Shown one piece after another: positions 9,328 through 41,056 of a stretch of 64,000 bases of DNA. The DNA is from Perkinsela sp. CCAP 1560/9 (lineage: Eukaryota > Protista > Euglenozoa: Kinetoplastea). The translations under genes were made by a program, and so were the position numbers. Numbering within the stretch: the first letter of the stretch is position 1; each line of letters opens with the position of its first letter. The notes beneath the pieces were generated by a model. It did not search any database and was not told the origin of the DNA. It saw only the letters and a program-made list of their open reading frames with translations. Where the stretch lies: the NCBI GenBank assembly GCA_965644495.1, contig CBFFSA010000001.1:868001-932000 (forward strand), given 5' to 3'.

Positions 9328-11732
9328 ATGGACCCCGACGAGACGTACGGCATGCCTCGCTCAAGAGCCTTCGTGGACCCTTTTGACAATGTTCCACCAC
9401 CACCCATCCATGCAGAACCGGAACCAGAGTCGTACGATGTCGAGAGTCCGGGCGCCCTTCCCGATAACATGACCGTGGCGCACGGACTACCGGCCGCCGA
9501 GACTCGCACCGTCATATGGGGAACCTCCATCGATATCCAAGAACTCGAGCGTAGCTGTCGGCAGTACGCCGAGACCGCACTTCACAGCCGACTGCGAGAG
9601 CTCACACAACCCGGGTGCGGCCTGGAGGTGGACATGTCCACACTCGCGGACACCCACCCCTTTCTTCACGAATCCATGATGGAACACCCCACGACCTGTA
9701 TCCCGGTATTCGAGCTCGCCCTCGGGGAGCACTGGTATCAAATCCACACAACCCCCCCTGCCGGCGTGCGTGAGCTCCCCTCCGCGACCTCCCCCCACGC
9801 CCCCTCGGTTCGCCCCCTTGTCCTCTGCCCCTACAACGTCCCCGAGACCGCGATGAATGGGCTCTCCCACCTCCACGTGGAGCGTCTCACCGCGGTCCGG
9901 GGTATTGTCGTGCGCACCTCCACGGTGATCCCCGAGATGGCCCACGCGGAGTTCCAGTGTGAGAAGTGTGCGCTCACCACCCACTCCAGCGTGGATCGGG
10001 GTAAAATCCACGAGCCCCCGCGCTGTCCCGGGTGTGGCGCCCACGGCACCTTCCGTCTCATGCACCACCTGTGTATCTACGAGGACAAACAGGTGATTCG
10101 GCTACAGGAGACCCCCGAGGATATGCGTCCCGGGGAGACCCCGATTACGATCGCGCTCTCGGTGTACAACGCCCTCGTGGACAGTGTGGTGCCCGGGGAT
10201 GTGGTGGTGGCCACCGGGGTGTATCGCGTGCACCCTGCACGGATCCAGCAGAACCGGTATTTGTGCCATGCCGTGGTACGCTCCCATATGGATTGTATTC
10301 ACTTGAAAAGGCTGAAGAAGAGGAATGCACACGATCGTATGAATGAGGGCACGGAGAGGTTTCTGAGCTGTCTGGAGAATAAGGATACCGAGAGTGCGTA
10401 TTTTTTGGGTGAGGTGCAGCGTTTGCGGGAGATGAAGACCGGCCGGATATTTATGACCTCCTGCGACAGTCCCTGGCCCCCTCCGTGTTTGGGATGGAGA
10501 GCGCGAAAGATGGGCTACTGACCCTTCTGTTTGGTGGAACCGCAAAACAATTCTCCAACAGCTCCTGTCGTGGGGAAATTAATATTCTGCTTTGTGGTGA
10601 TCCCGGGCTGGCGAAATCGCAGCTCCTGGCGCATGTGCACCGTGTGTCCCATCGTGGGGTTTATGTGAGTGGTCGAAGTAGCAGTAGTGTCGGACTCACA
10701 GCGTACATTGTGCGCGACGCTGACACAGGGGATCGCGTACTGGAGAGCGGTGCGTTGGTTTTGTCCGACGGTGGGGTGTGCTGTATTGATGAGTTTGATA
10801 AGATGGACACGCAACAGCGAAATGTGCTAAAGGAAGTCATGGAGCAGCACACGTTAAGTATTGCGAAAGCAGGTATTGTGTGCCAGTTGAATGCGCGAAC
10901 CTCAATATTGGCCGCGGCGAATCCTCGCGAGAGTAAGTGGGATAAAAATCTTACCGTTGTTGAGAATCTAAATTTGGACCCCGGTCTACTCAGTCGATTT
11001 GATCTCATCTATCTAATGCTTGATGACCACCCTGAGGAGTTTCACCGCTCCTTAACTCGTCATCTCATTCGCATGTTCGGAGCCACAGGTCCGGAGGAGA
11101 ACGAAAAAGCAGCGGATGCGATGGACACGGATGGAATCGTCAACACGGGTGAGGAAGTTATGTCTTCCACAGACCTCACTAAATTTATTGTGTACGCCCG
11201 CTCACAGATCCATCCTGTGCTCTCGGCTGAGGCTCAGAACTCCCTTATCAATACCTACTGCACCATGCGGGGAGTGCGCTCGTTTGGTTCCATGAGCCCA
11301 ACTCTCCGTACGCTGGAGTCGCTCATACGACTGGCGGAGGCCAGGGCACGTATGCGATGGAGTGTGCAGGTGACATTACGCGACGCTGAGGACGCGCGTG
11401 ATCTAATGCACGCCGCTTGGGGAAGTGCCGGAGTGGACCTCACTGCGGGATCCGGTGACACCGGGGTAAACTTTGCTCGCGTATTTGGTGGTCACGTTTC
11501 CGAGGGCGGCGCTGATTTGCTTGTACGTCGAATCGAGGAGTATCTCCGCACCGTAAGCGAGAGAAGTACGGTGTCAATGGATGAACTTCGCCGTGTGCTA
11601 GGGCGCGGGAGGTCTACTAGTATGGAAGAGATTGCAAATGCGGTGCGCATACTGGAGGTGCGGGAAGTAGTTGTCGGGTTCGACGCTCGAAATGTGTACC
11701 TACGAAATGCATCAGAGGATGCCCGAGGTTAA
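9328..11732 (+). CDS. MCM4: DNA replication licensing factor MCM4, split by a -1 frameshift near 10436
   Basis: VIWGT, C4 zinc finger (CEKC..CPGC), DKQVIRLQETPE..GETP in ORF1; Walker A GDPGLAKSQLL, CCIDEFDKM and SRFD arginine finger in ORF2. Adding one base gives ...REMKDRPDIYDLLRQSLAPSVFG. Confidence 0.9.
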
Positions 11733-19714: not shown

Positions 19715-20437
19715 ATGTTTTTTACCCGCACCACCCTTTGCTTCAACACTGCGGAAAGCTACGGCGCTACACGTCTTTCCAGGGTACGTGGAGCTCAACT
19801 CCCACCGGAGGTGCAGCTCGGACGATTCATTGCCACTGTTCGCCATCCGCACGCTTCGTGGTCCGCAGATTATCCCGCTCACGGGTGGCTCGGGGTGAAA
19901 ACTAAGGACGACGGCTCAGTAGAATCGATAGGGTGGCATTACGTCTCCCATTACGTCGGGAGCGTTCCTTGGCACCACTTGCCCGATACTCTTTTGAGCC
20001 TTGCAATCGCTGGTGCTACAATGGACGGAGGACTCCTCGCCGCTTACCTTCCTCGGACGCTTCGCCGTGTTTACTTGGTGCAAGATCACCTTTCTGGGCC
20101 CGTAGATTGGAGTGAGTTTCCGTCTTCCCTTACTCATCTGTCGCTTAATAAGAACCATTTTAATGGTACGATAAATGCAAATCAACTACCGCATACACTG
20201 AATACTCTCTCGTTGTATTCCAATAAGTTTTCGGGGGCGCTAGTCGTAGACGCGATGCCGCCGAGGATCTGCTACGTTTTTATGCAAATGAATTTGATTT
20301 CTGGTGTAGTAAAACTCGAAAATTTGCCTTCGACGTTACGGTGCCTAGATTTGTCACAAAATTTTATTCGGGAGTTCATTCCAATGTCTGTTCCCAATGT
20401 CGTCTGTATTAAAAATCAAGGCGCATCTCTAACTTGA
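19715..20437 (+). CDS. Leucine-rich repeat protein
   Basis: Repeated LP.xL..L.L..N.(F/L)SG.(V/I) units; N-terminal W.GV cap. Confidence 0.85.
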   Translation: MFFTRTTLCFNTAESYGATRLSRVRGAQLPPEVQLGRFIATVRHPHASWSADYPAHGWLGVKTKDDGSVESIGWHYVSHYVGSVPWHHLPDTLLSLAIAGATMDGGLLAAYLPRTLRRVYLVQDHLSGPVDWSEFPSSLTHLSLNKNHFNGTINANQLPHTLNTLSLYSNKFSGALVVDAMPPRICYVFMQMNLISGVVKLENLPSTLRCLDLSQNFIREFIPMSVPNVVCIKNQGASLT

Positions 20438-26939: not shown

Positions 26940-29900
26940 ATGACCTCAGAAAGCCCCAGTCACAAAGAATTAACTTGCGCCGACATGACGGGCTCTGCGA
27001 AGCGGCCTGAGGAACGCACTCCACCCATACGGGTTCTTAAACGTGTTACATCGAAGGACCTTGCAAAAGAACCACACACCGAGATTCCCAGTGACAGGCA
27101 ACACGATTCCGATCGACCTGAGCCGAGACGTCGGGGTGACAGACATACCTCTCGAAGTGGGCCACAACGACTGACACACTCGCGCCCTCGAGAGGGTAGG
27201 ATTTCCCGCAGGACTCAACGCGGTGGTGGCATGCCCTTTGCTCCGGAAATGGAGCACGACTCCGACTTTCTTCCCCCTTTTCTACCCTCCCCACAGCACC
27301 CTGACAGTGGACCCTACGGTCTTGTCCCCCCGTCGTTTTATCCCCCGCCAGGATTTACCGAGCACGGGTACCCCATGCCAGGCGCTCTAGGACGCGACCC
27401 GGTCCCCCACTTTTCTCGCCGTGGCAGGAACACGCGCGGACGAATGGACCGCGGGGGAATGGGCCACCCGATGGATGTTCCTTACCCTCTCCCTCCTCCG
27501 ATTTCACCTGACGTTTCGATTTCACCTGTCCATCGTGGCTCTCTTCATGGCTCGATGATGCGAGGTCGTCGTGTTCCGTACCCCCCATCTACGTCAGAAT
27601 ATGACGCAGGAAGAGTGTTTCGAGCTCGTCGCGGTATGACACCCGGATTTGAAAATTCCGCTAGTGCGCCCTATGGTGAGTACTATGCACTAGAAAATCA
27701 GGAAGCCGAAAGCAATGCACGTCTGGAAGGCACACCGATGCCGTACGAAACTGCAAACGCCCAACGTAGAAGAAATCGAAATCGGTACATACCCTCACAA
27801 GGAGATAGAATTCACGATGAAATGAATGCAACCAATGTGGACGAGTTTCGGGATCTCGCAATGTACACATCTTCAGAATTCCGGAAACAAGGTACGGGAT
27901 ACTCTGAATTTCTTGAGAGTGATGCCAATCACTCTGAGTTTCATGAAAAACGACCCTTGAGTAATTCTCCGTTTTTAAAAGTACACTTGGTGCCGCCATC
28001 CCCGGACACGATCTCGCTTGCGAGTCACATTGCTGGTTCTTGGCTGGAACTTCTTCCTGATGACGTCACTGAGCCACACACTCGTCATGAAAACAAACCA
28101 TTTGCTTTTATATCGTCTCCAGCGAAGCAGGAAATCGTACCAACTGCGATCGAAATGTCTACCAATGCCCAGAAAGAAATGTATATATTGGATGAAAATT
28201 TCCTGGAACATCAAGGCGAAATGTACAATGATATGGCCCATAAGGCGGTACATCTCGAAGAAAAAGTATTGCCACATGAAATTCGTAAGGATGATACCTT
28301 AGAAGCCGTGTATCCCCGGGTCACGATGCAACATGATGATTTCTATCACACTTTCATTGAACATGGAGACGCAACGCTTGTGGAGCTATGGAGCATGGGA
28401 TCTAACGAATCCATCCGATCACGAGCCATGACACGTGTGACTCATCACTGGTCTCTGACAGGACTACAAGCACCATTTCACTGGGCTCTGCTCACCACTA
28501 TGCACCGTACTAAAGGAAGGTCGAACATTCAAGAATTATTTACGTGGCAGCTCGTCAAAAAGATTCACCAGAGTCCGTGTTTATTCTTCAATCTGGAGAA
28601 GTATAAGTGCAACCGCAACGAAGATCACGAAACACAGGGCTTTCATTTTTGTTTGTGCTGTGGCCGTGGTGATCACGGTGCTCATATTTGTCCAAGTCTA
28701 AACAAATTGGAACGTCTTCTGCGTGACTTAGGGGTCCTTTTGAAAGTATCTGAAGAGACTCTCATGCAATTCTTCGGGTTGCAAGAAAGTGAACCTCCTC
28801 CAACAATCGTGGTGCTATTAAACGAAACTGCCATGCCACTTCACGCGCACGGAAATACTAAAAGCCAGGTGATTAATAATGTGTCATCATCTGAGAGCGT
28901 AGAAAATCATCGGGCACAGCCTTCAGCGCGCACGAGATCATGCTCTCCGGCTTCTCGCCTTACACCGTTAAACAGATTTCGAGATGTTTTTCTTATGAAA
29001 GATATGGATAAACATCCTTCACTTTCGAAAACTCGACTAACTGCCTCTAAACAAGACATCTACCAAAATTTTGTTGCATCAAACTTAAAATTGCGCGATA
29101 TTTGGAAAATGGGGAACAATTCGAGATTGAGAAAGAAGGCTTTCGCATTGTTAAGAGAATGTCCGTCATCTATGCCGTTCTTTTGGACCCTCCTGGCTGC
29201 TGTATGGACAGAGTCTGTTGTTACGCCGTTTTGGGTGAAATTGGACTACTCCATATCAGAAACTCCTTGCTTCGCTTACAACACGGGAAACTGTGTTAAC
29301 AAGAATGTTCAACATATTCAGAATAAACATTTTTGTCTTTGCTGTGGGCATTCTCACCACGATGCGGCAAACTGTTCCACAATGAAAGGCTTGCGGAGTG
29401 CAATACAACAATTCGCGCACGATCTGGGAACATCGGTAGCCGCTGTAGCGGAAATCTTTGGGACGGAAAAAATAAATGATCGTTTTTCTATCTCTGTTAC
29501 GATAGCAGTGACAAAAAGGAATGCCGACATAACACCATCGACATCAAAGAATACTATTAGTGATGATTCAGGTGCGGGCGAAGAAAGTGATGAATCATCT
29601 TTTCGCAGAAATTTTATGTTAGATGAAGTCCAAAAAGTGATTTCGATTTCTAGAACTCGATTTTACGACGTGTTTGTGACTTCGGAAGATGATCTTCGCA
29701 GTCTTTGGTTTGTGACCTCTAGTGATGATGCTCAAAGTTGCGCTGAGACGGTAATGACACGTCATTGGTACAAGACGTCGTTTCGAGACGTGCCTCGTCT
29801 ATGGGCCATATTAACTGCAGCGCATTGGGTAAGGTTTTTAAAGCCACACACATTCAATTGGCAACGTCGTAAGCATCCTCAAGGCTACCCTTGCCTCTAT

Positions 29901-30917
29901 TTCAACAAGGCTGACAACATGTGTGCTCTTTCGGAAAGGCACGTCCCGGCGGGTTTTCATTTTTGTTTGTGTTGCGGCGAAACTGATCATGGAGCCCGAA
30001 CTTGTCGAAATCTAAAAAGATTGGAAAAGAGGCTTATCCACTTTTCGCAACAGTTCGGCCTCACGCGTGATGGATTTGATCGACTATTAGGCATTACAGG
30101 CCCTCCATCACGCTCAGTATTTTACATTCGAGACCTTAACAATACGGAGTACTCTCGGTCCCGTTCCACTTCCAACACTGCGGCGCAGAAAAGTTTGGCA
30201 GTCCCTGCTGCTCAAGGAGGAGTAGACCCAACTTTGAATGAAGTGTTGAATACATCAAATGGTACTTCAGAGGATAACTCATTCTATGCTTTCGAACATG
30301 ACGTTGTTCACAAACAAGAAGCGTTGGACAGGGCCTATGATGAAGAGCGACTAGCCTTCGCACAACATGAGCTTCATCGTCAACAATATGAGCGTGCGCA
30401 GAGTATTCTAAAGCTAGATGAATTTTCAAATTCGGAGGATCAAGCGCACTTTCAAATTCTAGAAAAGAGTTTTCAAATATCGAAAGATTCGCATCTCCGC
30501 AAGCAGCAGGATCTAGAGTCAATTCGTCGCGATTTAAGCTCTTTAGAACAGAAGCGGTATGCGGAATCTCTAAACGACACTGAAGAATTCAAGACTCCTA
30601 TGGTCTGCGAAGCAATGGAAAGCTTTGAGCAGAGCGAAACTGCTCACAAACGAACAACTTCAGATATTGTCGACGAAAAAGCAAATCAGGTTTCACATAT
30701 TCATCAGAAACAAATAAATCGCCACTCACAGGAGAAAGCGACATCTCCTTTCAGTAAAATACACAGCAAGTCATATTCTGATTTACTACATGAAGCTTTT
30801 GCATCACTCCTTATCGGACTTCATGATCACTTACGTTTGTTCGGAAACATCCCCTATATGGTGTTTTGCATTACAGTATGCGTTTTCGTTCTACTCGTAT
30901 TGTATCATATGCTGTAA
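26940..30917 (+). CDS. 1325-aa protein: Arg/Gly/Pro-rich N-terminus, three Cys/His + CCHC knuckle modules, coiled coil, C-terminal transmembrane anchor
   Basis: Three PC..(Y/F)N..C.....H....HFCLCCG...H....C repeats; ends YMVFCITVCVFVLLVLYHML. Confidence 0.85.
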   Translation: MTSESPSHKELTCADMTGSAKRPEERTPPIRVLKRVTSKDLAKEPHTEIPSDRQHDSDRPEPRRRGDRHTSRSGPQRLTHSRPREGRISRRTQRGGGMPFAPEMEHDSDFLPPFLPSPQHPDSGPYGLVPPSFYPPPGFTEHGYPMPGALGRDPVPHFSRRGRNTRGRMDRGGMGHPMDVPYPLPPPISPDVSISPVHRGSLHGSMMRGRRVPYPPSTSEYDAGRVFRARRGMTPGFENSASAPYGEYYALENQEAESNARLEGTPMPYETANAQRRRNRNRYIPSQGDRIHDEMNATNVDEFRDLAMYTSSEFRKQGTGYSEFLESDANHSEFHEKRPLSNSPFLKVHLVPPSPDTISLASHIAGSWLELLPDDVTEPHTRHENKPFAFISSPAKQEIVPTAIEMSTNAQKEMYILDENFLEHQGEMYNDMAHKAVHLEEKVLPHEIRKDDTLEAVYPRVTMQHDDFYHTFIEHGDATLVELWSMGSNESIRSRAMTRVTHHWSLTGLQAPFHWALLTTMHRTKGRSNIQELFTWQLVKKIHQSPCLFFNLEKYKCNRNEDHETQGFHFCLCCGRGDHGAHICPSLNKLERLLRDLGVLLKVSEETLMQFFGLQESEPPPTIVVLLNETAMPLHAHGNTKSQVINNVSSSESVENHRAQPSARTRSCSPASRLTPLNRFRDVFLMKDMDKHPSLSKTRLTASKQDIYQNFVASNLKLRDIWKMGNNSRLRKKAFALLRECPSSMPFFWTLLAAVWTESVVTPFWVKLDYSISETPCFAYNTGNCVNKNVQHIQNKHFCLCCGHSHHDAANCSTMKGLRSAIQQFAHDLGTSVAAVAEIFGTEKINDRFSISVTIAVTKRNADITPSTSKNTISDDSGAGEESDESSFRRNFMLDEVQKVISISRTRFYDVFVTSEDDLRSLWFVTSSDDAQSCAETVMTRHWYKTSFRDVPRLWAILTAAHWVRFLKPHTFNWQRRKHPQGYPCLYFNKADNMCALSERHVPAGFHFCLCCGETDHGARTCRNLKRLEKRLIHFSQQFGLTRDGFDRLLGITGPPSRSVFYIRDLNNTEYSRSRSTSNTAAQKSLAVPAAQGGVDPTLNEVLNTSNGTSEDNSFYAFEHDVVHKQEALDRAYDEERLAFAQHELHRQQYERAQSILKLDEFSNSEDQAHFQILEKSFQISKDSHLRKQQDLESIRRDLSSLEQKRYAESLNDTEEFKTPMVCEAMESFEQSETAHKRTTSDIVDEKANQVSHIHQKQINRHSQEKATSPFSKIHSKSYSDLLHEAFASLLIGLHDHLRLFGNIPYMVFCITVCVFVLLVLYHML

Positions 30918-31853
30918 TGCGGCTGTTTAAACTTTACTTGTACGCTGGGGGGTATACGGTATACAAAAGTATACCGTATTATTCCTTCAAAAGATTTCTA
31001 CACGAACAAAGAGAGAGGTAAAATGGAAATATGTTCTCTTAACGAAGAGATGTTGTATTGAAACCGGGGGGATCATCTTTCCCAATGGAGTACAAAATTA
31101 CGTTTTGCAGCGTAAAGTCAACAAAATTAACACTGCGGATATTTTCTACTCACCGCACATATTGATACTAACCATTGCATTTGATTTATTCCCGGAATAA
31201 TGAGTAGATCGTAAAATGGCATTGCTTGTTTTAAGTAAATGTTTTATATGAAATATTTAAACACATTGTGAATTCACTGTCTCTCAGTTTTTTCCTATCG
31301 GATTTCAGTTATCTCTGGAGTGGCGTAGAGCGTTGCTCCAATGCACAAATATATTCTACGTACATGCATATTACGTACATGTATGTACGTATGATTTCGT
31401 ACACATTTTATTTTTTGAGAAAAGAAGTTATTGTATATTTTTCTGGTGAAGGAGAGTGTAACTTCGGTTAGGTTCAACCTTTTATGATTATAGTGTACCA
31501 CTTTTGTCTAGTCGATGCAGATACTATAGTACTGTGTCGATAGTCCAGATGTATTTACGTGAATGATAGCCGCTGAAAGAGCAATTTTATTAATTGAATT
31601 AATTACATAATAGTGAAGGCAATAATAGCTCCATCCTGCTCCGGTAATTTACTTCATTGACAAATGTACACCACAGGGTGAATACATTTTCAACGTATTA
31701 GAGCGTAAACTTAAACCACTTCATCTGTTTCTTTTTTGAATGTGAATAACGTACTCAGTAGAGTAGCTAATTTGTCGTACACAACATATTTCATTTCAAT
31801 TTAGGTTGTTTGTTATTTCCTTTTTGACGTAGTGTCCAAGTAACGTCAAGCTA

Positions 31854-34800
31854 ATGCAACCTTATGTGTTGGACGGGAGCCAGCGAGAGCGACTTCACAA
31901 AACCATTCTCACAGTAGCCAAACTTTCATCAGTCGCTGCGATATGGAAAATGGCATGTGAAGTGAAAGATGACATCCAAGCTCATGTGAAAAATGCGGGT
32001 CTCTCAGTTCGGCGCAACGTGTACATTTCAGGTCAATCTCTAGCTCTTGGATATTGGGATCCAACTTCTCCACTTGAACTAACGGCATTATCCCCGGAAG
32101 ATCAAACATTGGCATCTCAAATGGGATCTAAATCTAGGCTACGAATGTCAGCAGAAATCGATGCGGTACAGTTTAGTCGGTATTTTTCTACTTTGTCTCT
32201 CTCAGAGAAAGGAACGATTTTACTTTGTCGCGGCACCGAGAGTCAAAGGAACGACTGCATTCAGTACCGTGCCAAAGGCATGCATCCCTCTCGGGTAGAT
32301 CAAACGAGTAGATACACGAACATCAATTTTAATCTTAAGTTCGGTGGGACAGATGTGTTTGAAGCTGTTCTCCACAGATTATACTTCACACAACATCCAA
32401 TGATTTACTTGGGCGCTCGAGTTCTTTTAAAGCTCGCTCATTCAATGGAATTCTTCACGTGCCGTAAGTCAAGCTTACGATCCGAAGTTATCATGAAGAT
32501 GTGGACATATTTTGTTTGTCAGACGCGTAAGAATTTGGTTCAATTCGTTCCTCCGCAAGTTGCATTAGATGAATTTCATAAGCTCTCGTTGCAACTGGAG
32601 CTTTTGCGACTGAGTTATCAGCTACAAAGCGAAGTAAGCTCAACACTTGAGATTCTAGTTCAATTCTATGAATTTTACTCCTCAAAGTTTCTGTTTGAAG
32701 AACACGCCTTGTCACTGTCCAAACCGGGGACCACGTACAAGCCCAAAAGTGTAGAAGAAATTACTCCAACTGATAAAGAATATTGGGCTACGCCGGGTGT
32801 CATATGGCTCTATGACTGCTTCGAGAGAAATTTTTATCGCTTGAAATCTCCAGCGTTCACTATTTCCCAACTCCGACGGCTGTTTCGTGATACTGTTTCC
32901 CATCTAATGCCACCTCCGTGGGCTTCATATCCACAAGGCTCAAATCCGGCCATGCCCCCCCAGTACAATGAGGACATATTTTCACCACCGCTTCCAGGTA
33001 TGAATGAATTACCGATGCATGATGGCGGCCAGTTCATGGGACATCCAGCTAACCCTTTGGAAATGATACCCCGCAACATTTCGGCACCCCACGGATCTTC
33101 CGACTTCAGCATGCGCTCGAATATGTATAACCCATTAGCCACACCTTACCACCCCAATCTACCTTCCAGTTCTACCGGGGGACACACACAGAAATTTCAT
33201 AAGGGACATGCAGTCCTACCATTTGAATCCCATCAAGGCTTGAAAGCCAGCGCTCGTCTCAAAAACGCGGCTATAAGTGACCCCATTGCTTCAAAGTTGA
33301 TGAATCCGCAAGATTTGGAGCAACACGATGAAGCTTCTCTCCAAAAGGACGTAACAAATGTCCTGCAGCCTTTACTAGAAAGTATGCGTTCAAAAAATAC
33401 TGAAGATGAACCAGAATCGCCGAATTCTTTGCTGCGTCGTCCCATGTTTGGATTTAATATAGATGCGGGGCCCGAAGATGCCCTGAATCTAGAGAATCCT
33501 TCGGGTGTAGATACAGTCTTTGAAAAGCTTCGGATTGCTGAGCCTACGACTACCCCAATACAAGGATCCTTGCTTGACTCCATGCAATTTTTAAACGAAT
33601 TTCAAACGTTCGAAGCTGACTCCCCCATTCCTTCAAACGAGCGAGCATCGTTCACCCCGGATCGGGAAATAATCAGCATTCATGACGTTCGTTCACCACC
33701 CGAACGTCTTACTCCCCAGGTGGAAGCCCAACAGAGCGGTTTACGCAAATCTGTACCTTGGACACGCCCGGGAGATCACGCCACCTCACCTAGCAAAGCA
33801 TTTTCTCGCTCTGAAACAGGTTTGCAGCTTACAAAGAAGGATTTTTATCAAACCTATGTAGACTGCTCAGATGAAACTATGCGAGATTTATGGTACATGG
33901 GTTCACAGGAACTTATCCGGACCCGTGCGATAGACCTTTCTGACAATCACTGGGCTCAAATATCAGTATCGGCTTCCTTTTTTTGGGCTCTTCTTGCAGC
34001 ATCACACGGTTGTCGCTCGGGTAGAAATGCCGCCCACACGTCTACTCGGTCTTTGGTCTGGCATGTCGCAAAAAGGACACAGCACACACCTTGCTTGTTT
34101 TATAATCATGCCGTTGGCGGATGCAAGCAAAATGCTAAGCACGGTACTGCTGGATTTCATTTTTGCTTGTGCTGCGGTGCTGAAGAACACGGAGCGTCAA
34201 ATTGCTTAGCACTCCAGCGCTTACAATCTCGAATTCGGGAGCTTGCTGTTACCCTAGAAGTTGATCTTGAGGTGCTTCAAAAGTTCATGGGATTTACACG
34301 TTTGACTCCGCCTCAAATAATTGTTCTTCCGGTTAAACACCCGCAAACTTCGATTAAATCTCCGATGAGAACAATCATAGGTAACTCCGATGGTCTAGAA
34401 GCATCACTTTCGCCTGATCCCATAGACGAGCTTACTATTCCGGGTAAAGTTGAATTACCGACAACTAAGAAAACTGATGACGATCCGAATCTTAGGTTGC
34501 TAGACGATGTGAGCTCCGTTACCGGTATTAAAGACCTCAAAATGGACGAAGGCCGTATTTCTAGAAACGAATTCTTCAAAGAATGGATCGTAAGTGACAT
34601 CTACTTAAGTGACGTATGGCATTTGTGTAGCGAAGGTGCCGTTCGAACGAGCGCCGAGGACATGTGGTCAAATCATTGGTCTCGTACGGCACTCACATTG
34701 CCTTATTTTTGGGCCCTATTAGCGTCAGCACGCGGATCGGGAATAAGAGGCTTAGTATGGCAGAAATCTTCTGACAAGAACTCAACAAGTCCTTGTCTGT

Positions 34801-37800
34801 ACTATAACTCCAAGGAAAATTTGTGTAAGAAGGTAACTGCTCATCGAGAGGCGGGGTTTCACTTTTGCCTTTGTTGTCTACTTCGAGATCACGGTGCATG
34901 CGCCTGCCCAGAGTTGCGAGAGATTTCGCGTCGCGTAAAAAGTCTGTCCCGCGTACTGTCTATATCAGAACACCAGCTTTCACAGTTCGTTGGAATGCAA
35001 CGCACTCCGAAACTTCCGAATGCAATTCATCTACGTACACCACCACCGCCGAAGCGAGCTTCTATCACTAGTACGCCGAACCATGTTTCTGCATCCAACG
35101 AGAATGGTTCATCCAGTGGCTCGCAGCAGACGATTAACGTATCCACTTCAAAAACTAGTGTACGTAGTACTGCGGGTAGTCGGGATCCCACCGCAACAGA
35201 AATTTCTCGAGATCTGTTTTACCGATCGTACGTTGCAGATGAAGAGGATTTAAATAGCTTATGGTATCTCACATCGAATGGAGATGTTCGCGAATGTGTC
35301 CAAGATCTTCTTGTTACACACTGGGAAAAAACCACTATCCGCAATATTCCACATTTGTGGGCAATTCTTACTGCAGCTCACTGGGTGCGCTTCACAAAAG
35401 CACCCAAACTAGGATGGCAAAAAATTAAGCATACACACCGCTACCCTTGCTTGTATTACAACAATTCTGAGAATAATTGTAACCAGCAGGAGCGCCACCG
35501 AACAGCCGGATTTCATTATTGCTTATGTTGTGGAGAAGAGCATGGAGTGTATCATTGTAAAGTTATGCGTAGGCTACAGAAGAGGATGGATTACTTTGCT
35601 ATGCAATTCGGCATGTCGAAGGGTGAATTAGAAAAAATAATTGGAATCAATAACGAGTCCGTTCCCCAATTCATTCACATAAATAAGCGAACTCACATTA
35701 ATGGGGAAATCGACAACATTCCCGAACCAGAAAAAAGCAAAAAGACACCCACTTTTTCACCAAAGAATGAGACGCAAGTTTCCTCGTCAAGTGGAGTGAA
35801 AGAAAAGGGAACAATTGCTACTGATTTATCCGCGCGCAAGGAGAAAAAGACCGAAACATCTGAAACGAAATCGAATCGGACAGTGTCACAGACCGACAAG
35901 GGACGCAACGCAGATCGAAATGCGCGACAGGACACATCAGCCGAGCAGATAGAACTACTCTGTGGTACAAAAGAGAGTAAGACAAAGACTAAGAAAGCGC
36001 GTCCCAGTCTTGACATCGGCGATGATCTGACTGTCATGCTTGATATTCGCAAAAACAAAGGGAACAAAAAAGGTATACGTTCCTCCGCTCAAGGCCGTCG
36101 AGCTCTGGATCTAACGAGCGCCGAGACGGAGTGGCTTCTTAGGTCACCAGTCACCGATGAACTTGTTGCGTCTATGGAATTGTGGTCTTCTGGACGACAT
36201 GATTCGAAGGGATGCTCCTGTCATATTGACACTGAAGAGACCACTGTGGAAGATGCGGAAATATCGAGCAATCTTGATCTGTCACTTACCGATTCTGAAG
36301 AACAAATTGAGACCACAGGAAAGTCGAAAAGCAAACCTGCGACTGCATCGGAATGGAAGCGCAAGGGAAACGAGGCTTTTCAGTCAGGCGATTACAATCG
36401 CAGTATACAGTGTTATTCAAGCGGCATACAGGCGGAGCCACAGTTAGCATCGCTGTACTATAATCGCGCCATTGCGTATCTACGCTTGGAGAAACATAAG
36501 AAAGCCCACGAAGATGCTACTGCTTGCGTCGTTCTCGCCCCACAATGGGCTCGAGCTCATCTTTGTCTTGGTGAATGTCTACGACTTCTCGGAAAATGGC
36601 ATGCCGCAAGCGATGCTCACCGACGAGCGTTGGAGGTAGACCCGAGTAGTAAATTGGTCAAGAGTAGGTGCAATCAGCTGGTAAGTCAAGCGAGTCTAAC
36701 TGCGATTCGAACTTGCGTCACATTTCTCGACAGTTCCGCATTTGACCCCGAGGTAATGGCTCAGGCCACGTGTCGTATTCTCTATATTTTGGATCAAAGT
36801 CACCCCGAAAACGAAACGCAGTCCATCAGACCATTACCGTCTTCATATGACTTTATCTTTGAGAAGATTATGGACCTGCTACAAGATCGAAGTATTAAGC
36901 ATGTAAATTTACTTGGCGATTGTCTCTGCATTTTAGGCTATTTTGCTCCGAAGAACGCCAATTACGTTGTTGCAAAGGTTGCTGCGCACTTTCGCTGTAT
37001 GGCGGAAAACGACACTCGGCTCTGGCCTCTCATTTATAGAGGGTGTTGTGGAGATTTTGCCGAACTTTCACGGCAATGCTACCCGCGTGATCTCGCTGAA
37101 CTTTATCGTCGATTGTGTCTTGATGAGCTAGACGTGTTCATAACGACAGGTACCAAGCTAGTTTCGCGTCGACAGTACGATGCCATCTGGTGGCTCATGC
37201 TGCTACTTTACTACATGATCCGTACTCGACAATCTCGCACAGCCACTAGTGAAACACCTCGTGAGACGAACACGGTGGAGGACGTTAAATGGGAGCACTT
37301 CAAAGTTTTATTAGATGGCGTGCAATATATTTTCAATGCTCTCCCCCAGAAAAACCAACTGGAATGTATCGAGGCCGTAACGGGTATTTTGTGTCGTGCA
37401 CTACTGTGCGGGCATGTGCAACGTGTCCTGAAGTATGGTATCCTACAGCAAATTTTCTCTATCCTCCCGCGTCATACGCCTTTTCAGTTAGGAGTGGCTC
37501 CACTTACGGCTTCCGAAGGACGTGCCGCGAACATGCTGTTTTCGACTTTGCTCACGTTGACGAAGTATCACAACACACCCTTGATCAAGGTGGCTCATTC
37601 GGAAGATCTACTTCTGCTAAATCTGGCCTGTTGGTATGTCCCAACACGACGCCAGTGGCATTTGGCGGTGGATCCCCTTCGTTTCATGATGCAAACAGAC
37701 GAGAATCTGACACGCTCCTTCATGCAGGACTCCCACATGATCGCGATGGTTACGCACATCCTGTACACTGACACACACTGCTCCCATTTGCGCTGCATGA

Positions 37801-38387
37801 CACGACTGGTCTCACAATGTTGTGCGGCTAATGAAACCTATTTGCAAGCATTTGTGCGCTCAGGCGCACTTTTGGCGATTTGTATGCGGGCAAATATCTG
37901 TTGGGCAATGCTCGAACTTCTGCACCGTGCCGCGGCACCGTACTCTTTAGATACATTCTTTAAGGTTTCAGAAGAGAACGCAACAGTGGAAGTGGTAACG
38001 CGACCGATTGAACTTTATCCTGATATTCGAGGCTTGTTCTCAGTGTTTCGCAAAGCCTCCAAGGAGGATGAACCGGTACGCCGTAGTCTGGGACTCCAGC
38101 TCCGGACGTTCGGCTTACTACCGATGCTCTGTGATACGTTCGAGCGCGCCGCAAGTACGCTTCCAAGTACTTCGTGTCCATTCTGTGGCTCACCGAGAAG
38201 CGTAAGTAAGAAAGAAAACAAACAAAATCTGGCGAAAAATGTTGCTTTCGAGCATCACAAGAAAGGCCTTGAGATGGAAGCCAAGCAAGTGCGAGATGCT
38301 GTGAACAGTGCAATCGGACCTCTGATTTATGACGATACAGAAGACGAAGAGGCGGCGCATATTTCTGATCGTAGCTTCGCAGGATAG
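31854..38387 (+). CDS. 2177-aa protein: degenerate TUTase/PAP-like domain, three Cys/His + CCHC knuckle modules, TPRs, helical (ARM-like) C-terminus
   Basis: VYISGQSLALGYWDPTSPLELT (GS..G...SDxD-like), LVQFYEFYSSKFLFEEHALSL and IWLYDCFE (PAP-associated-like); WKRKGNEAFQSGDY..LYYNRAIAYLRL..RALEVDP is a three-TPR block. Confidence 0.85.
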   Translation: MQPYVLDGSQRERLHKTILTVAKLSSVAAIWKMACEVKDDIQAHVKNAGLSVRRNVYISGQSLALGYWDPTSPLELTALSPEDQTLASQMGSKSRLRMSAEIDAVQFSRYFSTLSLSEKGTILLCRGTESQRNDCIQYRAKGMHPSRVDQTSRYTNINFNLKFGGTDVFEAVLHRLYFTQHPMIYLGARVLLKLAHSMEFFTCRKSSLRSEVIMKMWTYFVCQTRKNLVQFVPPQVALDEFHKLSLQLELLRLSYQLQSEVSSTLEILVQFYEFYSSKFLFEEHALSLSKPGTTYKPKSVEEITPTDKEYWATPGVIWLYDCFERNFYRLKSPAFTISQLRRLFRDTVSHLMPPPWASYPQGSNPAMPPQYNEDIFSPPLPGMNELPMHDGGQFMGHPANPLEMIPRNISAPHGSSDFSMRSNMYNPLATPYHPNLPSSSTGGHTQKFHKGHAVLPFESHQGLKASARLKNAAISDPIASKLMNPQDLEQHDEASLQKDVTNVLQPLLESMRSKNTEDEPESPNSLLRRPMFGFNIDAGPEDALNLENPSGVDTVFEKLRIAEPTTTPIQGSLLDSMQFLNEFQTFEADSPIPSNERASFTPDREIISIHDVRSPPERLTPQVEAQQSGLRKSVPWTRPGDHATSPSKAFSRSETGLQLTKKDFYQTYVDCSDETMRDLWYMGSQELIRTRAIDLSDNHWAQISVSASFFWALLAASHGCRSGRNAAHTSTRSLVWHVAKRTQHTPCLFYNHAVGGCKQNAKHGTAGFHFCLCCGAEEHGASNCLALQRLQSRIRELAVTLEVDLEVLQKFMGFTRLTPPQIIVLPVKHPQTSIKSPMRTIIGNSDGLEASLSPDPIDELTIPGKVELPTTKKTDDDPNLRLLDDVSSVTGIKDLKMDEGRISRNEFFKEWIVSDIYLSDVWHLCSEGAVRTSAEDMWSNHWSRTALTLPYFWALLASARGSGIRGLVWQKSSDKNSTSPCLYYNSKENLCKKVTAHREAGFHFCLCCLLRDHGACACPELREISRRVKSLSRVLSISEHQLSQFVGMQRTPKLPNAIHLRTPPPPKRASITSTPNHVSASNENGSSSGSQQTINVSTSKTSVRSTAGSRDPTATEISRDLFYRSYVADEEDLNSLWYLTSNGDVRECVQDLLVTHWEKTTIRNIPHLWAILTAAHWVRFTKAPKLGWQKIKHTHRYPCLYYNNSENNCNQQERHRTAGFHYCLCCGEEHGVYHCKVMRRLQKRMDYFAMQFGMSKGELEKIIGINNESVPQFIHINKRTHINGEIDNIPEPEKSKKTPTFSPKNETQVSSSSGVKEKGTIATDLSARKEKKTETSETKSNRTVSQTDKGRNADRNARQDTSAEQIELLCGTKESKTKTKKARPSLDIGDDLTVMLDIRKNKGNKKGIRSSAQGRRALDLTSAETEWLLRSPVTDELVASMELWSSGRHDSKGCSCHIDTEETTVEDAEISSNLDLSLTDSEEQIETTGKSKSKPATASEWKRKGNEAFQSGDYNRSIQCYSSGIQAEPQLASLYYNRAIAYLRLEKHKKAHEDATACVVLAPQWARAHLCLGECLRLLGKWHAASDAHRRALEVDPSSKLVKSRCNQLVSQASLTAIRTCVTFLDSSAFDPEVMAQATCRILYILDQSHPENETQSIRPLPSSYDFIFEKIMDLLQDRSIKHVNLLGDCLCILGYFAPKNANYVVAKVAAHFRCMAENDTRLWPLIYRGCCGDFAELSRQCYPRDLAELYRRLCLDELDVFITTGTKLVSRRQYDAIWWLMLLLYYMIRTRQSRTATSETPRETNTVEDVKWEHFKVLLDGVQYIFNALPQKNQLECIEAVTGILCRALLCGHVQRVLKYGILQQIFSILPRHTPFQLGVAPLTASEGRAANMLFSTLLTLTKYHNTPLIKVAHSEDLLLLNLACWYVPTRRQWHLAVDPLRFMMQTDENLTRSFMQDSHMIAMVTHILYTDTHCSHLRCMTRLVSQCCAANETYLQAFVRSGALLAICMRANICWAMLELLHRAAAPYSLDTFFKVSEENATVEVVTRPIELYPDIRGLFSVFRKASKEDEPVRRSLGLQLRTFGLLPMLCDTFERAASTLPSTSCPFCGSPRSVSKKENKQNLAKNVAFEHHKKGLEMEAKQVRDAVNSAIGPLIYDDTEDEEAAHISDRSFAG

Positions 38388-38709: not shown

Positions 38710-39681
38710 TTGACTTGCCTTAATCTCTACGCGATGTTAACGTCCCTGCTTATAATGACGCTCCTGGGGTATTGCTTTACCCAGAATGAGATGGGGAACG
38801 GTGAAGAGCGAGAGGTATCACCCAAAAATGCTGAGGCTGATTCTGATATGCGAGATTCGTACGAAAAAATGGAAGAAAAGGAAGATTTGGAAGGGCATAA
38901 AATCTCTGATTTTCAACATTTTCGAAACACGTGTGTGCAAACTTTGTCTCGCATATTGACATTTTTTGCGCGAGTCTTTCGTTGCGACCGCTCGTTTATG
39001 TTTCTCGGTTCCAAGCCCAATGAGTCCCCTGAAATGCCATCAGAGGTCTCATTACAGTCTCATGCTATTCTTGACGCACGCCGATGTACTGTCCACTCTT
39101 ACGTCAGGGTCACAAAAGAATCTCTTTCGGAGTACGTTCGACCGGAGTATGTATACGAAGACTTGCGACGCCCTGGACTCGTTGAAGAAGTTATTGAGAC
39201 AGGCGCTAGCCCCGCAGCTCGCCTGCATGAGACCCTTCACGCGCGGGAACTGGCCACATTGGATGCTTTTCCTACACTACGGAGAACTCTTTTGGATGGT
39301 AAATATCCCAGACACGTTGGGGAAACTGTTCGTATCGAACCTTGCTCTTATGACCAGCGCTGCTACGACTTACACGACGCTAGTTCCGAAGTTAATTGGG
39401 ATGAGGCGTACGGCACTACGAAGGTATGCGCCGTACAAGGCACAGACGACATGAAAGCTCTCGCAGTTGATCTCGAGAATTGGTTCCACTCGAACTCTAC
39501 AACAGAGACGGCTCACCCCTCCATGATGGTAGTGCGTGAGGTGGACAATGGGCGCTACGCGTGGAATCGCGTCTCCTCAGGACACACCGAGGCGAAGAAG
39601 AATGCCCCATTGAACGCCCAAAATAATTTTCTCGTATGCCCCTGCGTCGAGAGAGGCATTCGAAAGCATGTGCGTACATGA
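38710..39681 (+). CDS. Hypothetical protein (start uncertain)
   Basis: ~320-codon + ORF in cluster orientation; no motif recognised. Confidence 0.6.
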   Translation: MTCLNLYAMLTSLLIMTLLGYCFTQNEMGNGEEREVSPKNAEADSDMRDSYEKMEEKEDLEGHKISDFQHFRNTCVQTLSRILTFFARVFRCDRSFMFLGSKPNESPEMPSEVSLQSHAILDARRCTVHSYVRVTKESLSEYVRPEYVYEDLRRPGLVEEVIETGASPAARLHETLHARELATLDAFPTLRRTLLDGKYPRHVGETVRIEPCSYDQRCYDLHDASSEVNWDEAYGTTKVCAVQGTDDMKALAVDLENWFHSNSTTETAHPSMMVVREVDNGRYAWNRVSSGHTEAKKNAPLNAQNNFLVCPCVERGIRKHVRT

Positions 39682-39952: not shown

Positions 39953-41056
39953 ATGAGCCAGTTCGGCACCTCTCCTTTCCACGCCCCTCCTCCCCACCCC
40001 CGCGGGGTCCCACCCGGTCCTCCCTACCCTCCCCCCACCAGCACCCACCCCCTTCCCCACCCCCCTCTCCCCCCTACCCCCGTCCCCCGGGTCAGTCCCC
40101 TCTCCGGACTCAACCCCTCCCCCACCCCCGTGACCCCCTCCCACGGTCCTCTCCCCCCACCCCCACCCCCTCCCCTTCCCCCTCCCTCCTCCTGCGAAGA
40201 CCCCAAAATCTGGTCCCTCGTCAGCCAACTCCTCGAGCCACAGACCCGCGAATCCGCCCTCTACGAACTCTCCAAAGTCCGCGAGCGCCACCCCGACCTC
40301 GCCCTCACCCTCTGGCACGCCACCGCGGTCATCGCGCTCCTCCTCCAGGAGCTCACCGCGGTCTACCCCCGCCTCCTCACCACCCCCCCCGACCTCCCCC
40401 CCGCCGCCTCCAACCGCGTCTGCAACGCGCTCGCCCTGCTCCAGTGCGTCGCCTCCCACCCCGACACCCGCCCCCCCCTCCTCCGCACCCACCTCCCCCT
40501 GCTGCTCTACCCCCTCCTCTCCACCACCCACCCCGCCCGCGCCCTCGACTACCTCCGCCTCACCAGCCTCGGCGTCCTCGGCGCCCTCGTGAAGTCCGAC
40601 GAGCCCGAGGTCATCCGCTTCCTCCTCGCCACCGACCTCATCCCGCTCTGCCTCAAGACCATGGACCGCGGCGTCGAGCTCACCCGCACCGTCGCCACCT
40701 TCGTCCTCCAGAAGATGATCCAGCCCGACCACGGGCTCCGGTACGTCTGCGCCACCCCCGAGCGGTTCACCGCCGTCAGCAACACCCTCCGCACCATGGT
40801 CGCGGACGCCCCCACCGCCCGCCTGCTGCGCCACATCATACGGTGCTACCTGCGGCTCTCGGACCACCCCCAGGCCCGGGAGGTGCTGCAGCAGCAGCTC
40901 CCCGCCCCGCTGCGGGACACCACGTTTAGTAAGTTTCTAAACGAGGACGTGAACATGCGGAAGTGGCTGTATCAGCTTTTGCTGAATATCGGGGACCCCT
41001 TTGTGACGCAGCTGCACCAGCAGCAGGCGGGGCCGCTGATGCCGCTGTCCACGTAG
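39953..41056 (+). CDS. CNOT9: CCR4-NOT subunit CNOT9/Rcd1/CAF40 with Pro-rich N-terminus
   Basis: RESALYELSK.RE..PDLA..LW, SNRVCNALALLQCVASHPDTR, YLRLTSLGVLGALVK, RLLRHIIRCYLRLSD. Confidence 0.97.
   Translation: MSQFGTSPFHAPPPHPRGVPPGPPYPPPTSTHPLPHPPLPPTPVPRVSPLSGLNPSPTPVTPSHGPLPPPPPPPLPPPSSCEDPKIWSLVSQLLEPQTRESALYELSKVRERHPDLALTLWHATAVIALLLQELTAVYPRLLTTPPDLPPAASNRVCNALALLQCVASHPDTRPPLLRTHLPLLLYPLLSTTHPARALDYLRLTSLGVLGALVKSDEPEVIRFLLATDLIPLCLKTMDRGVELTRTVATFVLQKMIQPDHGLRYVCATPERFTAVSNTLRTMVADAPTARLLRHIIRCYLRLSDHPQAREVLQQQLPAPLRDTTFSKFLNEDVNMRKWLYQLLLNIGDPFVTQLHQQQAGPLMPLST

What the first reader, a model, noticed from the sequence alone, without database searches (positions are those of the whole stretch)
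26940..38387. Adjacent giant genes sharing an apparently novel triplicated zinc-binding module: candidate two-component RNA-handling system
Seen: each protein has three ~150-aa repeats (gene 1 ~28330-28785, 29050-29465, 29650-30100; gene 2 ~33835-34300, 34565-35000, 35210-35650). Each repeat has a helical part F(Y)..F(V)....L..LW......R..A.....HW......FWALL...W, then PC..(Y/F)N-x-C-x5-H-x5-H, then C-x2-C-x4-H-x4-C (x3-H in the last copy of gene 2), then a helix ending F.G. The repeats are collinear between the genes (repeat 1 LW.MGS.E.IR.RA; repeat 3 LWAILTAAHWVRF.K...WQ..KH..YPCLY), so the cassette was duplicated as a block and fused to different partners. Known: CX2CX4HX4C knuckles bind single-stranded RNA and accompany TUT4/7-type uridylyltransferases. 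Inference: a lineage-specific RNA recognition system with one membrane-tethered and one scaffold subunit. I do not recognise this composite module as a named family.
Basis: partly seen in the sequence, partly recalled or inferred. Interest (0 to 1): 0.85.

Follow-up and report, generated by a model that had tools for sequence, protein, structure and literature searches.

The report
New zinc domain with dead TUTase
A trypanosome relative of the amoeba-endosymbiont Perkinsela type has two neighbouring genes, each with three copies of an undescribed zinc-binding protein domain; one gene adds a membrane anchor, the other a disabled RNA-tailing enzyme, and elsewhere the domain sits on RNA helicases and kinases, so it is a plausible but untested RNA-recognition module.

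Summary
Observation confirmed. Two intact genes (1325 and 2177 aa) in a Perkinsela-like kinetoplastid each carry three ~160-aa modules: a helical bundle, a C-x7-11-C-H-H site, a CCHC knuckle and two closing helices. The block was triplicated, then duplicated (independent triplication rejected, p-AU 0.002). There is no Pfam, NCBIfam or PDB match; a confident model (pLDDT 91) has no fold match (best Z 2.7). The module is not locus-specific. Four Perkinsela relatives have one single-module, tail-anchored orthologue of gene 1; in the three with known genomic context it is syntenic and has no gene 2 beside it. Distant copies sit on a UPF1-like helicase, on kinases with a KEN/HEPN-like RN-x3-H tail, and alone in virus-like contigs. 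Gene 2 starts with a RET1-type TUTase domain lacking all three catalytic aspartates (also noted by this scan, s1-711594), then modules, TPR and a helical tail. Best reading: an RNA/RNP-recognition adaptor domain, with gene 2 working like TUT4's inactive nucleotidyltransferase module (~0.45). RNA binding is inferred from fusion partners only; the knuckles lack the usual base-stacking aromatic. A two-component complex is unsupported: tandem duplication explains the adjacency. Expression could not be checked.

The parts
26940..30917 (+). Gene 1 (1325 aa): disordered Pro/Arg-rich N-terminus, conserved SPFLK..PPSP motif, three modules, coiled-coil-like segment, C-terminal membrane anchor. Syntenic orthologue of the single-module Perkinsela protein KNH05566.1.
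27966..28004 (+). SPFLK..PPSP motif (aa 343-355) shared with all four Perkinsela orthologues; possible phosphorylation or linear interaction motif (inferred)
28317..28793 (+). Gene 1 module 1 (aa 460-618)
29025..29480 (+). Gene 1 module 2 (aa 696-847); degenerate helical part, metal ligands kept
29628..30107 (+). Gene 1 module 3 (aa 897-1056); the copy closest to the single Perkinsela module
30858..30914 (+). C-terminal transmembrane segment (aa 1307-1325, mean hydropathy 2.63); a C-terminal anchor is also present in the four Perkinsela orthologues (2.25-2.55)
31854..38387 (+). Gene 2 (2177 aa): pseudo-TUTase, three modules, TPR, helical C-terminal region, lone CxxC. No membrane anchor and no obvious mitochondrial presequence.
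31896..32888 (+). Catalytically dead RET1-type terminal uridylyltransferase domain (aa ~15-345). RET1 D310/D312/D473 correspond to P73/E75/N160; N483, T522, Y524 and R477 to E170, R209, E211 and G164; nucleotide-recognition D654/E657 are kept as D321/E324. No RET1 C2H2 finger; middle domain about half length.
   Evidence: PDB 5HZD/5IDO, E 1e-7; PMC5159558
33807..34307 (+). Gene 2 module 1 (aa 652-818)
34554..35018 (+). Gene 2 module 2 (aa 901-1055)
35190..35663 (+). Gene 2 module 3 (aa 1113-1270); modelled at pLDDT 91, pTM 0.87; no fold match
36345..36653 (+). Three TPR repeats (aa 1498-1600) of the Hsp70/Hsp90 co-chaperone type; carboxylate clamp partly kept (K, N, N, K>R, R>C; clamp positions from memory)
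36654..38186 (+). Hydrophobic, probably alpha-solenoid C-terminal region (aa 1601-2100) ending in a CxxC at aa 2108-2111; no homologue found

Best explanation
The repeat is one compact, undescribed domain of ~160 aa that probably binds two Zn ions: an N-terminal four-helix part, a CCCH-like site in which His replaces the third Cys (C-x7-11-C-x3-8-H-x2-7-H), a CCHC knuckle, and two closing helices (shown at sequence and model level). It is a mobile module of kinetoplastid-type protists. Here a three-module block was duplicated in tandem (shown). One copy is gene 1, the orthologue of a conserved tail-anchored Perkinsela protein (shown); it most likely sits on the cytosolic face of the ER (inferred from the hydrophobic anchor and the non-basic tails). 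The other copy is fused between a dead RET1-type TUTase domain and a TPR plus helical solenoid (shown). Inferred mechanism: the modules recognise single-stranded RNA or an RNP, three copies giving avidity. Gene 1 would tether such RNA to a membrane. Gene 2 would be a non-catalytic adaptor working like the inactive nucleotidyltransferase half (LIM) of TUT4: it holds RNA or RNP without adding nucleotides and passes it, through TPR and solenoid, to Hsp70/90 and to active tailing or decay enzymes, of which the genome has many. The two proteins are best seen as paralogues in one RNA-surveillance theme, not as proven subunits of one complex.
For: Metal ligands: five Cys and the knuckle His are invariant in the 25-row alignment; in 23 distinct modules the finger-closing His is kept in 21 and a middle His/Cys in 22. 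The distant homologues are real: a profile built without window sequences recovers each window repeat at 57-80 bits, and the Cys-free helical part alone links both sets. Fusion partners lean towards RNA enzymes: dead RET1-type TUTase; UPF1-like SF1 helicase with one or two modules (P0018/P0025, UPF1 E 4e-35); kinases with an invariant RN-x3-H tail in 3 of 3 complete members, the HEPN/KEN motif of PMC3710099. The only PDB neighbours of the zinc part are RNA-bound CCHC knuckles, MLV nucleocapsid and Lin28 (non-significant, E 5-9.5). Most modules are mildly basic. Precedent for a dead NTase acting as RNA/RNP adaptor: TUT4 NTD1 (PMC6488673). The genome holds 11 other PAP_assoc nucleotidyltransferase loci and Piwi genes.
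Against: The knuckles lack the base-stacking aromatic (aromatic in 4/23) and the Gly before His (2/23), and distant members have a 7-19 residue insert before the last Cys, so canonical guanine reading is not expected. The commonest partners are protein kinases and membrane anchors, which do not require RNA. The KEN-like tail is a motif-level call only: Pfam HEPN_Swt1 E 0.2, no IRE1/RNase L hit. The pseudo-TUTase has also lost most UTP and RNA contacts (N483, Y524, R477), so it may bind nothing.
Confidence: 0.45

Rival explanations
1. The module is a protein-protein interaction or oligomerisation domain with structural zinc; genes 1 and 2 are a membrane scaffold and a chaperone-linked scaffold with no direct RNA contact.
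For: Knuckle aromatic and Gly-His signature missing; conserved Trp residues fit a hydrophobic core; frequent fusion to kinases and anchors; some modules are neutral, pI 6.6-7.2; TPR and solenoid in gene 2.
Against: Independent fusions to a TUTase, a UPF1-like helicase and a KEN-like tail are hard to explain without RNA.
Confidence: 0.3
2. The module is the sensor of an innate anti-virus/anti-transposon network: kinase-KEN ribonucleases (RNase L/IRE1-like), a UPF1/MOV10-like helicase and a pseudo-TUTase share it, and virus-like elements carry stand-alone copies as decoys or captured RNA chaperones. This is a sharper version of the best explanation.
For: The module lies N-terminal on kinase + RN-x3-H proteins, where RNase L and IRE1 have their sensors. 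A stand-alone copy lies next to a HUH-Rep/SF3-helicase-like gene in an all-unknown 25-kb contig (P0016, L052), another in a virus-like contig (P0021, L055). Fast divergence and variable copy number.
Against: KEN homology not confirmed by profile; no such kinase tail found in this genome; no hit in IMG/VR; the origin of most distant contigs is unknown; gene 1 behaves like a single-copy syntenic housekeeping gene in Perkinsela.
Confidence: 0.2
3. One reading: genes 1 and 2 form one two-subunit complex, one membrane-tethered and one scaffold.
For: Adjacent genes, collinear cassettes, complementary architectures; paralogous domains sometimes heterodimerise.
Against: Adjacency is the expected result of tandem duplication; kinetoplastid polycistronic units are not functional operons (established knowledge); the three Perkinsela orthologues with known genomic context have no gene 2 at the locus and no second module protein of Perkinsela appeared in the profile search.
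Confidence: 0.15
4. Gene 2 is a neutral chimera or decaying by-product of duplication.
For: No homologue found for its N- or C-terminal parts; catalytic residues lost.
Against: A 6.5-kb frame is intact although the DNA has diverged far from gene 1 (best blastn stretch 66% over 193 nt); all metal ligands are kept; gene 2 repeat 3 has the shortest branch among the window repeats (0.22-0.25).
Confidence: 0.05

Closest known systems
Trypanosome RET1 (KRET1) 3' TUTase, PDB 5HZD/5IDO
   Same: Gene 2 aa ~15-345 is homologous (E 1e-7; E 3e-13 to this genome's own RET1-like gene); nucleotide-recognition D/E pair kept.
   Different: All three metal-binding Asp, plus N483, T522, Y524 and R477, replaced; no C2H2 finger; shortened middle domain; no presequence; fused to three modules, TPR and a solenoid. 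The genome keeps an intact RET1-like gene elsewhere.
Human TUT4/TUT7 (ZCCHC11/6): inactive NTD1 (LIM) plus CCHC knuckles
   Same: Dead nucleotidyltransferase domain and three CCHC knuckles in one chain.
   Different: No second, active NTase domain; the knuckles are embedded in a larger fold and lack the aromatic; the dead domain is of kinetoplastid RET1 type, so the resemblance is convergent.
Retroviral nucleocapsid / Lin28 CCHC zinc knuckle (Pfam zf-CCHC)
   Same: C-x2-C-x3-4-H-x4-C spacing in the window and Perkinsela copies; weak fold similarity over 26 columns.
   Different: No Pfam hit; Leu at the aromatic position; no Gly before His; long insert in distant members; packed against helices in the model.
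CCCH (TTP-type) zinc finger
   Same: C-x2-aromatic start and C-x7-9-C spacing; a weak language-model neighbour with 10% zf-CCCH.
   Different: Third ligand is His, spacing to the last His is usually 4-5, and the aromatic after the second Cys is absent.
Perkinsela sp. CCAP 1560/4 KNH05566.1 (annotated 'aminodeoxychorismate lyase')
   Same: Syntenic orthologue of gene 1: same neighbours, SPFLK..PPSP motif, module and tail anchor.
   Different: One module instead of three; 555 aa; no gene 2 beside it. The annotation has no support here (no Pfam hit) and no paper in the library mentions the accession.
IRE1 / RNase L kinase-KEN ribonucleases (concerns distant homologues only)
   Same: Sensor-like N-terminal module, kinase, then an RN-x3-H motif in a helical tail.
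   Different: No profile-level match to KEN; not found in this genome.

Membership tests
Active kinetoplastid TUTase (RET1/RET2/TUT4 type) | Homology to the Pol-beta NTase plus PAP-associated bi-domain | tested here: met
   PDB 5HZD E 1e-7; own RET1-like E 3e-13; PAP_assoc weak, below cut-off
Active kinetoplastid TUTase (RET1/RET2/TUT4 type) | Metal-binding triad D310/D312/D473 | tested here: not met
   P73/E75/N160
Active kinetoplastid TUTase (RET1/RET2/TUT4 type) | UTP contacts N483, T522, Y524, D654, E657 | tested here: not met
   Only D654/E657 kept; E170, R209, E211 at the other positions
RET1 orthologue | N-terminal C2H2 finger and full RRM-like middle domain | tested here: not met
   No finger; 85 versus 161 residues between the second and third catalytic positions; exact parent among the RET1-like paralogues unresolved in the tree
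TUT4/TUT7 (ZCCHC11/6) | Inactive NTD1 plus active NTD2 in one chain | tested here: not met
   Only one, inactive, NTase domain
zf-CCHC zinc knuckle | C-x2-C-x4-H-x4-C spacing | tested here: met
   5 of 6 window copies exact, one with x3
zf-CCHC zinc knuckle | Pfam profile match and base-stacking aromatic / Gly-His signature | tested here: not met
   No zf-CCHC hit in 25 members; aromatic 4/23, Gly 2/23
zf-CCHC zinc knuckle | Single-stranded nucleic acid binding | not testable with these tools
   Needs a binding assay
zf-CCCH finger | C-x8-C-x5-C-x3-H ligand set | tested here: not met
   His at the third position and different spacing; no Pfam hit
Tail-anchored membrane protein (gene 1) | Single hydrophobic segment at the C-terminus, none elsewhere | tested here: met
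   aa 1307-1325, hydropathy 2.63, next best 1.21; conserved in four orthologues
Kinase-KEN (IRE1/RNase L) ribonucleases, for the distant kinase homologues | R-N-x3-H motif after the kinase domain | tested here: met
   P0011, P0013, P0019
Kinase-KEN (IRE1/RNase L) ribonucleases, for the distant kinase homologues | KEN/HEPN profile or fold match | tested here: inconclusive

The most novel reading that the evidence does not exclude
The module is a new-fold RNA sensor shared by an unrecognised kinetoplastid RNA-defence network: RNase L/IRE1-like kinase-ribonucleases, a UPF1/MOV10-like helicase, a membrane tether and a pseudo-TUTase adaptor, with stand-alone copies carried by virus-like elements. 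Gene 2 would also be, as far as my searches show, the first dead RET1-type TUTase, convergent on the TUT4 LIM.
Probability: 0.2. Interest if true: 0.85.

Novelty: new variant of a known kind. Interest (0 to 1): 0.55.

Why it matters
Kinetoplastids regulate genes almost entirely at the RNA level, and uridylation is central to their biology, so a new candidate RNA-binding fold and a dead RET1-type TUTase are directly testable leads. The module is small, models with high confidence, has no structural neighbour, and is kept as a single-copy membrane protein even in the 9.5-Mb Perkinsela genome (PMC5601477), which suggests a function that resists genome reduction. The locus also captures domain gain or loss within one endosymbiont lineage: six modules in two genes here against one module in smaller relatives. 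Without binding data it remains an uncharacterised domain family rather than a system.

Tried and rejected
Pfam, NCBIfam, PHROGs and PDB sequence searches of the module gave nothing significant; weak Elf1, ClpX and TIM hits are Cys-pattern or chance matches. Fold searches of the whole module and of the zinc part alone gave no match. The word-index search found only the two window proteins. Searches for the gene 2 C-terminal region and N-terminal domain were blank, but one search also missed known RET1 proteins, so these blanks are weak. Profile hits P0008, P0017, P0020, P0023 and P0024 were rejected as repeat or plain-knuckle artefacts. Scans of viral and metagenome contigs found no further loci (some searches were turned back because the alignment was too variable and were rerun with closer queries). 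An origin from a DIRS/Ngaro-type gag CCCH-CCHC pair was considered from memory; the paper search gave nothing usable and it was not tested. A frameshift or intron joining genes 1 and 2 was rejected: gene 1 ends in a conserved tail anchor and Perkinsela genes lack cis introns (PMC5601477). For that reason the pseudo-TUTase and the gene 2 C-terminal region were not folded.
Full report
Setting. All long genes of the window lie on the + strand without introns. Their order (EamA, rhodanese, MCM, SRAP, DUF1796, RRM, [locus], Rcd1/CNOT9, PRKCSH, NMD3, SNF2, enoyl-CoA hydratase) is shared, with some genes missing, by Perkinsela sp. CCAP 1560/4 and two unnamed long contigs (orthologue identities mostly 40-84%). 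The organism is therefore a Perkinsela-like kinetoplastid, with a 21-Mb assembly against about 9.5 Mb for CCAP 1560/4 (PMC5601477).

Observation. Both genes are intact, and a public contig is identical over 10.5 kb of the locus (possibly the same reads). Gene 1 aa 461-1052 and gene 2 aa 657-1265 align collinearly (31%, E 8e-104) with similar linker lengths (78/50 versus 83/58 aa). Repeats 1 and 3 are reciprocal best matches; repeat 2 is not, and gene 1's repeat 2 is degenerate. A tree forced to hold gene 1's three repeats together is rejected (p-AU 0.002), while r1+r1, r2+r2 and r3+r3 are not. Triplication therefore came first and block duplication second. DNA similarity is nearly gone, so the event is old.

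The module. A profile search of 1.84 billion representatives gave 24 hits. After removing artefacts and duplicates, 23 distinct modules remain, 17 of them outside the window. They are true homologues: a profile of the distant set alone recovers each window repeat at 57-80 bits, and the Cys-free helical part links both sets. One Trp, five Cys and the knuckle His are invariant; the finger-closing His is kept in 21 of 23 and a middle His/Cys in 22 of 23. This fits two zinc sites, C-C-H-H and C-C-H-C (inferred; no metal was modelled). No Pfam, NCBIfam, PHROG or PDB family matches. AlphaFold2 gives one compact domain (pLDDT 91, pTM 0.87) with no neighbour: Foldseek best E 2.3, VIA-align best Z 2.7, Atlas TM at most 0.41. 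The zinc part folded alone (pLDDT 80) finds only RNA-bound CCHC knuckles of MLV nucleocapsid and Lin28, at non-significant E 5-9.5, and best Z 2.1. A missing match does not prove a new fold. The knuckle is atypical: the base-stacking aromatic and the Gly before His (signature from my own knowledge) occur in 4 and 2 of 23 modules and in none of the window copies.

Gene 1. Four Perkinsela proteins of 496-555 aa carry one module, the SPFLK..PPSP motif and a C-terminal hydrophobic anchor, as gene 1 does. Three have genomic context: each lies alone between the RRM and Rcd1 genes, with about 70-90 nt to Rcd1, and no part of gene 2 other than the module matches these loci. Gene 1 is their orthologue. 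Their module is closest to repeat 3 and nests with the repeat-3 pair (97/99; 94/98). This favours loss of two modules and of gene 2 in the smaller genomes, but a gain in this lineage is not excluded (p-AU 0.09). The very hydrophobic anchor with a short non-basic tail suggests the ER rather than the mitochondrial outer membrane (established rule of thumb; untested).

Gene 2. Residues ~15-345 match T. brucei RET1 (PDB 5HZD/5IDO, E 1e-7) and, among this genome's nucleotidyltransferases, the intact RET1-like gene best (E 3e-13). Six paralogues that could be aligned all keep G-S...D-x-D and the third Asp; gene 2 has G-Q...P-x-E and Asn. With RET1 numbering (PMC5159558), the metal triad D310/D312/D473 reads P73/E75/N160, N483/T522/Y524/R477 read E170/R209/E211/G164, and only D654/E657 survive. 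It is a pseudo-enzyme. The tree places it on a long branch among the RET1-like paralogues without resolving the parent. After the modules come three TPRs with a partly kept chaperone clamp and about 500 hydrophobic residues without a detected homologue (weak negative).

Other carriers of the module. These are a UPF1-like SF1 helicase with one or two modules; four kinases, one from Neobodo designis, that share a pre-kinase Cys motif, of which the three complete ones end in an RN-x3-H motif, the HEPN/KEN signature of PMC3710099, although no profile match to KEN was obtained; a module ORF directly ahead of a kinase ORF; and stand-alone copies, one beside knuckle genes and a HUH-Rep/SF3-like gene in an all-unknown contig and one in a virus-like contig. 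Only the Perkinsela and Neobodo proteins have usable taxon labels, so the range 'kinetoplastid-type protists' is inferred.

Mechanism. Shown: the domain, its ligand set, the duplication history, the tail anchor, the dead TUTase and the TPR. Inferred: RNA or RNP recognition by the module, from three independent fusions to RNA enzymes or RNA-enzyme-like domains; membrane tethering of RNA by gene 1; and a non-catalytic adaptor role for gene 2 like that of TUT4's inactive NTD1 (PMC6488673), feeding active tailing, small-RNA or decay machinery, which the genome has. I put this at about 0.45. A protein-interaction domain (0.3) is the main rival because of the atypical knuckle and the kinase and membrane partners. 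The defence-sensor reading (0.2) is a sharper form of the first. A physical gene 1-gene 2 complex has no evidence (0.15).

Limits. The pseudo-TUTase and the C-terminal region were therefore not folded. The virus-like contigs were only described.

Verdict. The feature is real. It is an undescribed zinc-binding domain family with no structural neighbour found, plus a dead RET1-type TUTase fusion. It is not a TUT4/7, not an active TUTase, not a standard zf-CCHC or zf-CCCH protein, and not shown to be a two-component system. New variant of a known kind; interest 0.55.

Noticed in passing
window 9328-10521 and 10485-11732: The MCM gene is split into two overlapping frames; it is one ORF of 787-825 aa in the syntenic Perkinsela-like contigs. 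Assembly indel or pseudogene.
   Followed up: partly
window 38710-39681: A 323-aa ORF between gene 2 and Rcd1 has no counterpart in the Perkinsela syntenic loci and no Pfam hit; weak START-domain hint from the Atlas, low recognition.
   Followed up: partly
window 39953-41056: Rcd1/CNOT9 has GC3 0.90 against 0.36-0.55 for the four other genes measured.
   Followed up: no
L052:7407-17359 (JGI 3300002143): Virus-like contig, all called genes on one strand: two small CCHC-knuckle genes, the module gene P0016, a HUH-Rep/SF3-helicase-like ORF, then ORFs without Pfam hits. Described only.
   Followed up: partly
L055:1893-2363 (JGI 3300050211): Stand-alone 156-aa module in a compact, virus-like contig next to a beta-repeat fibre-like ORF.
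   Followed up: no
P0011, P0013, P0014, P0019: A family of module-kinase proteins with a shared pre-kinase W/F-C-x-C-x1-2-C motif and, in the three complete members, a KEN/HEPN-like RN-x3-H tail; P0013 also has a C-terminal membrane anchor. Possibly an undescribed RNase L/IRE1-like family.
   Followed up: partly
P0007 (KNH05566.1); P0009 (RMG58605.1): The 'aminodeoxychorismate lyase' annotation of P0007 has no domain support. P0009 is labelled as a Bacteroidetes MAG protein on a 1-kb contig and is probably eukaryotic contamination.
   Followed up: no
L018:2505-4790: A second RET1-type TUTase (761 aa) with an intact catalytic triad but no obvious presequence or zinc finger; a candidate active partner for the gene 2 pseudo-enzyme.
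   Followed up: partly
G000:C11 and C21; C7:656178-681371: RET2-like and Piwi matches occur with identical scores on contigs C11 and C21 (possibly duplicated haplotypes), and three identical-scoring Piwi copies lie within 25 kb on C7.
   Followed up: no
window 19715-20437: The LRR/FNIP ORF is absent from two syntenic contigs but matches a 272-aa ORF in the Perkinsela CCAP 1560/4 locus (27%); it lies in a gene-poor 17.1-23.7 kb stretch.
   Followed up: no
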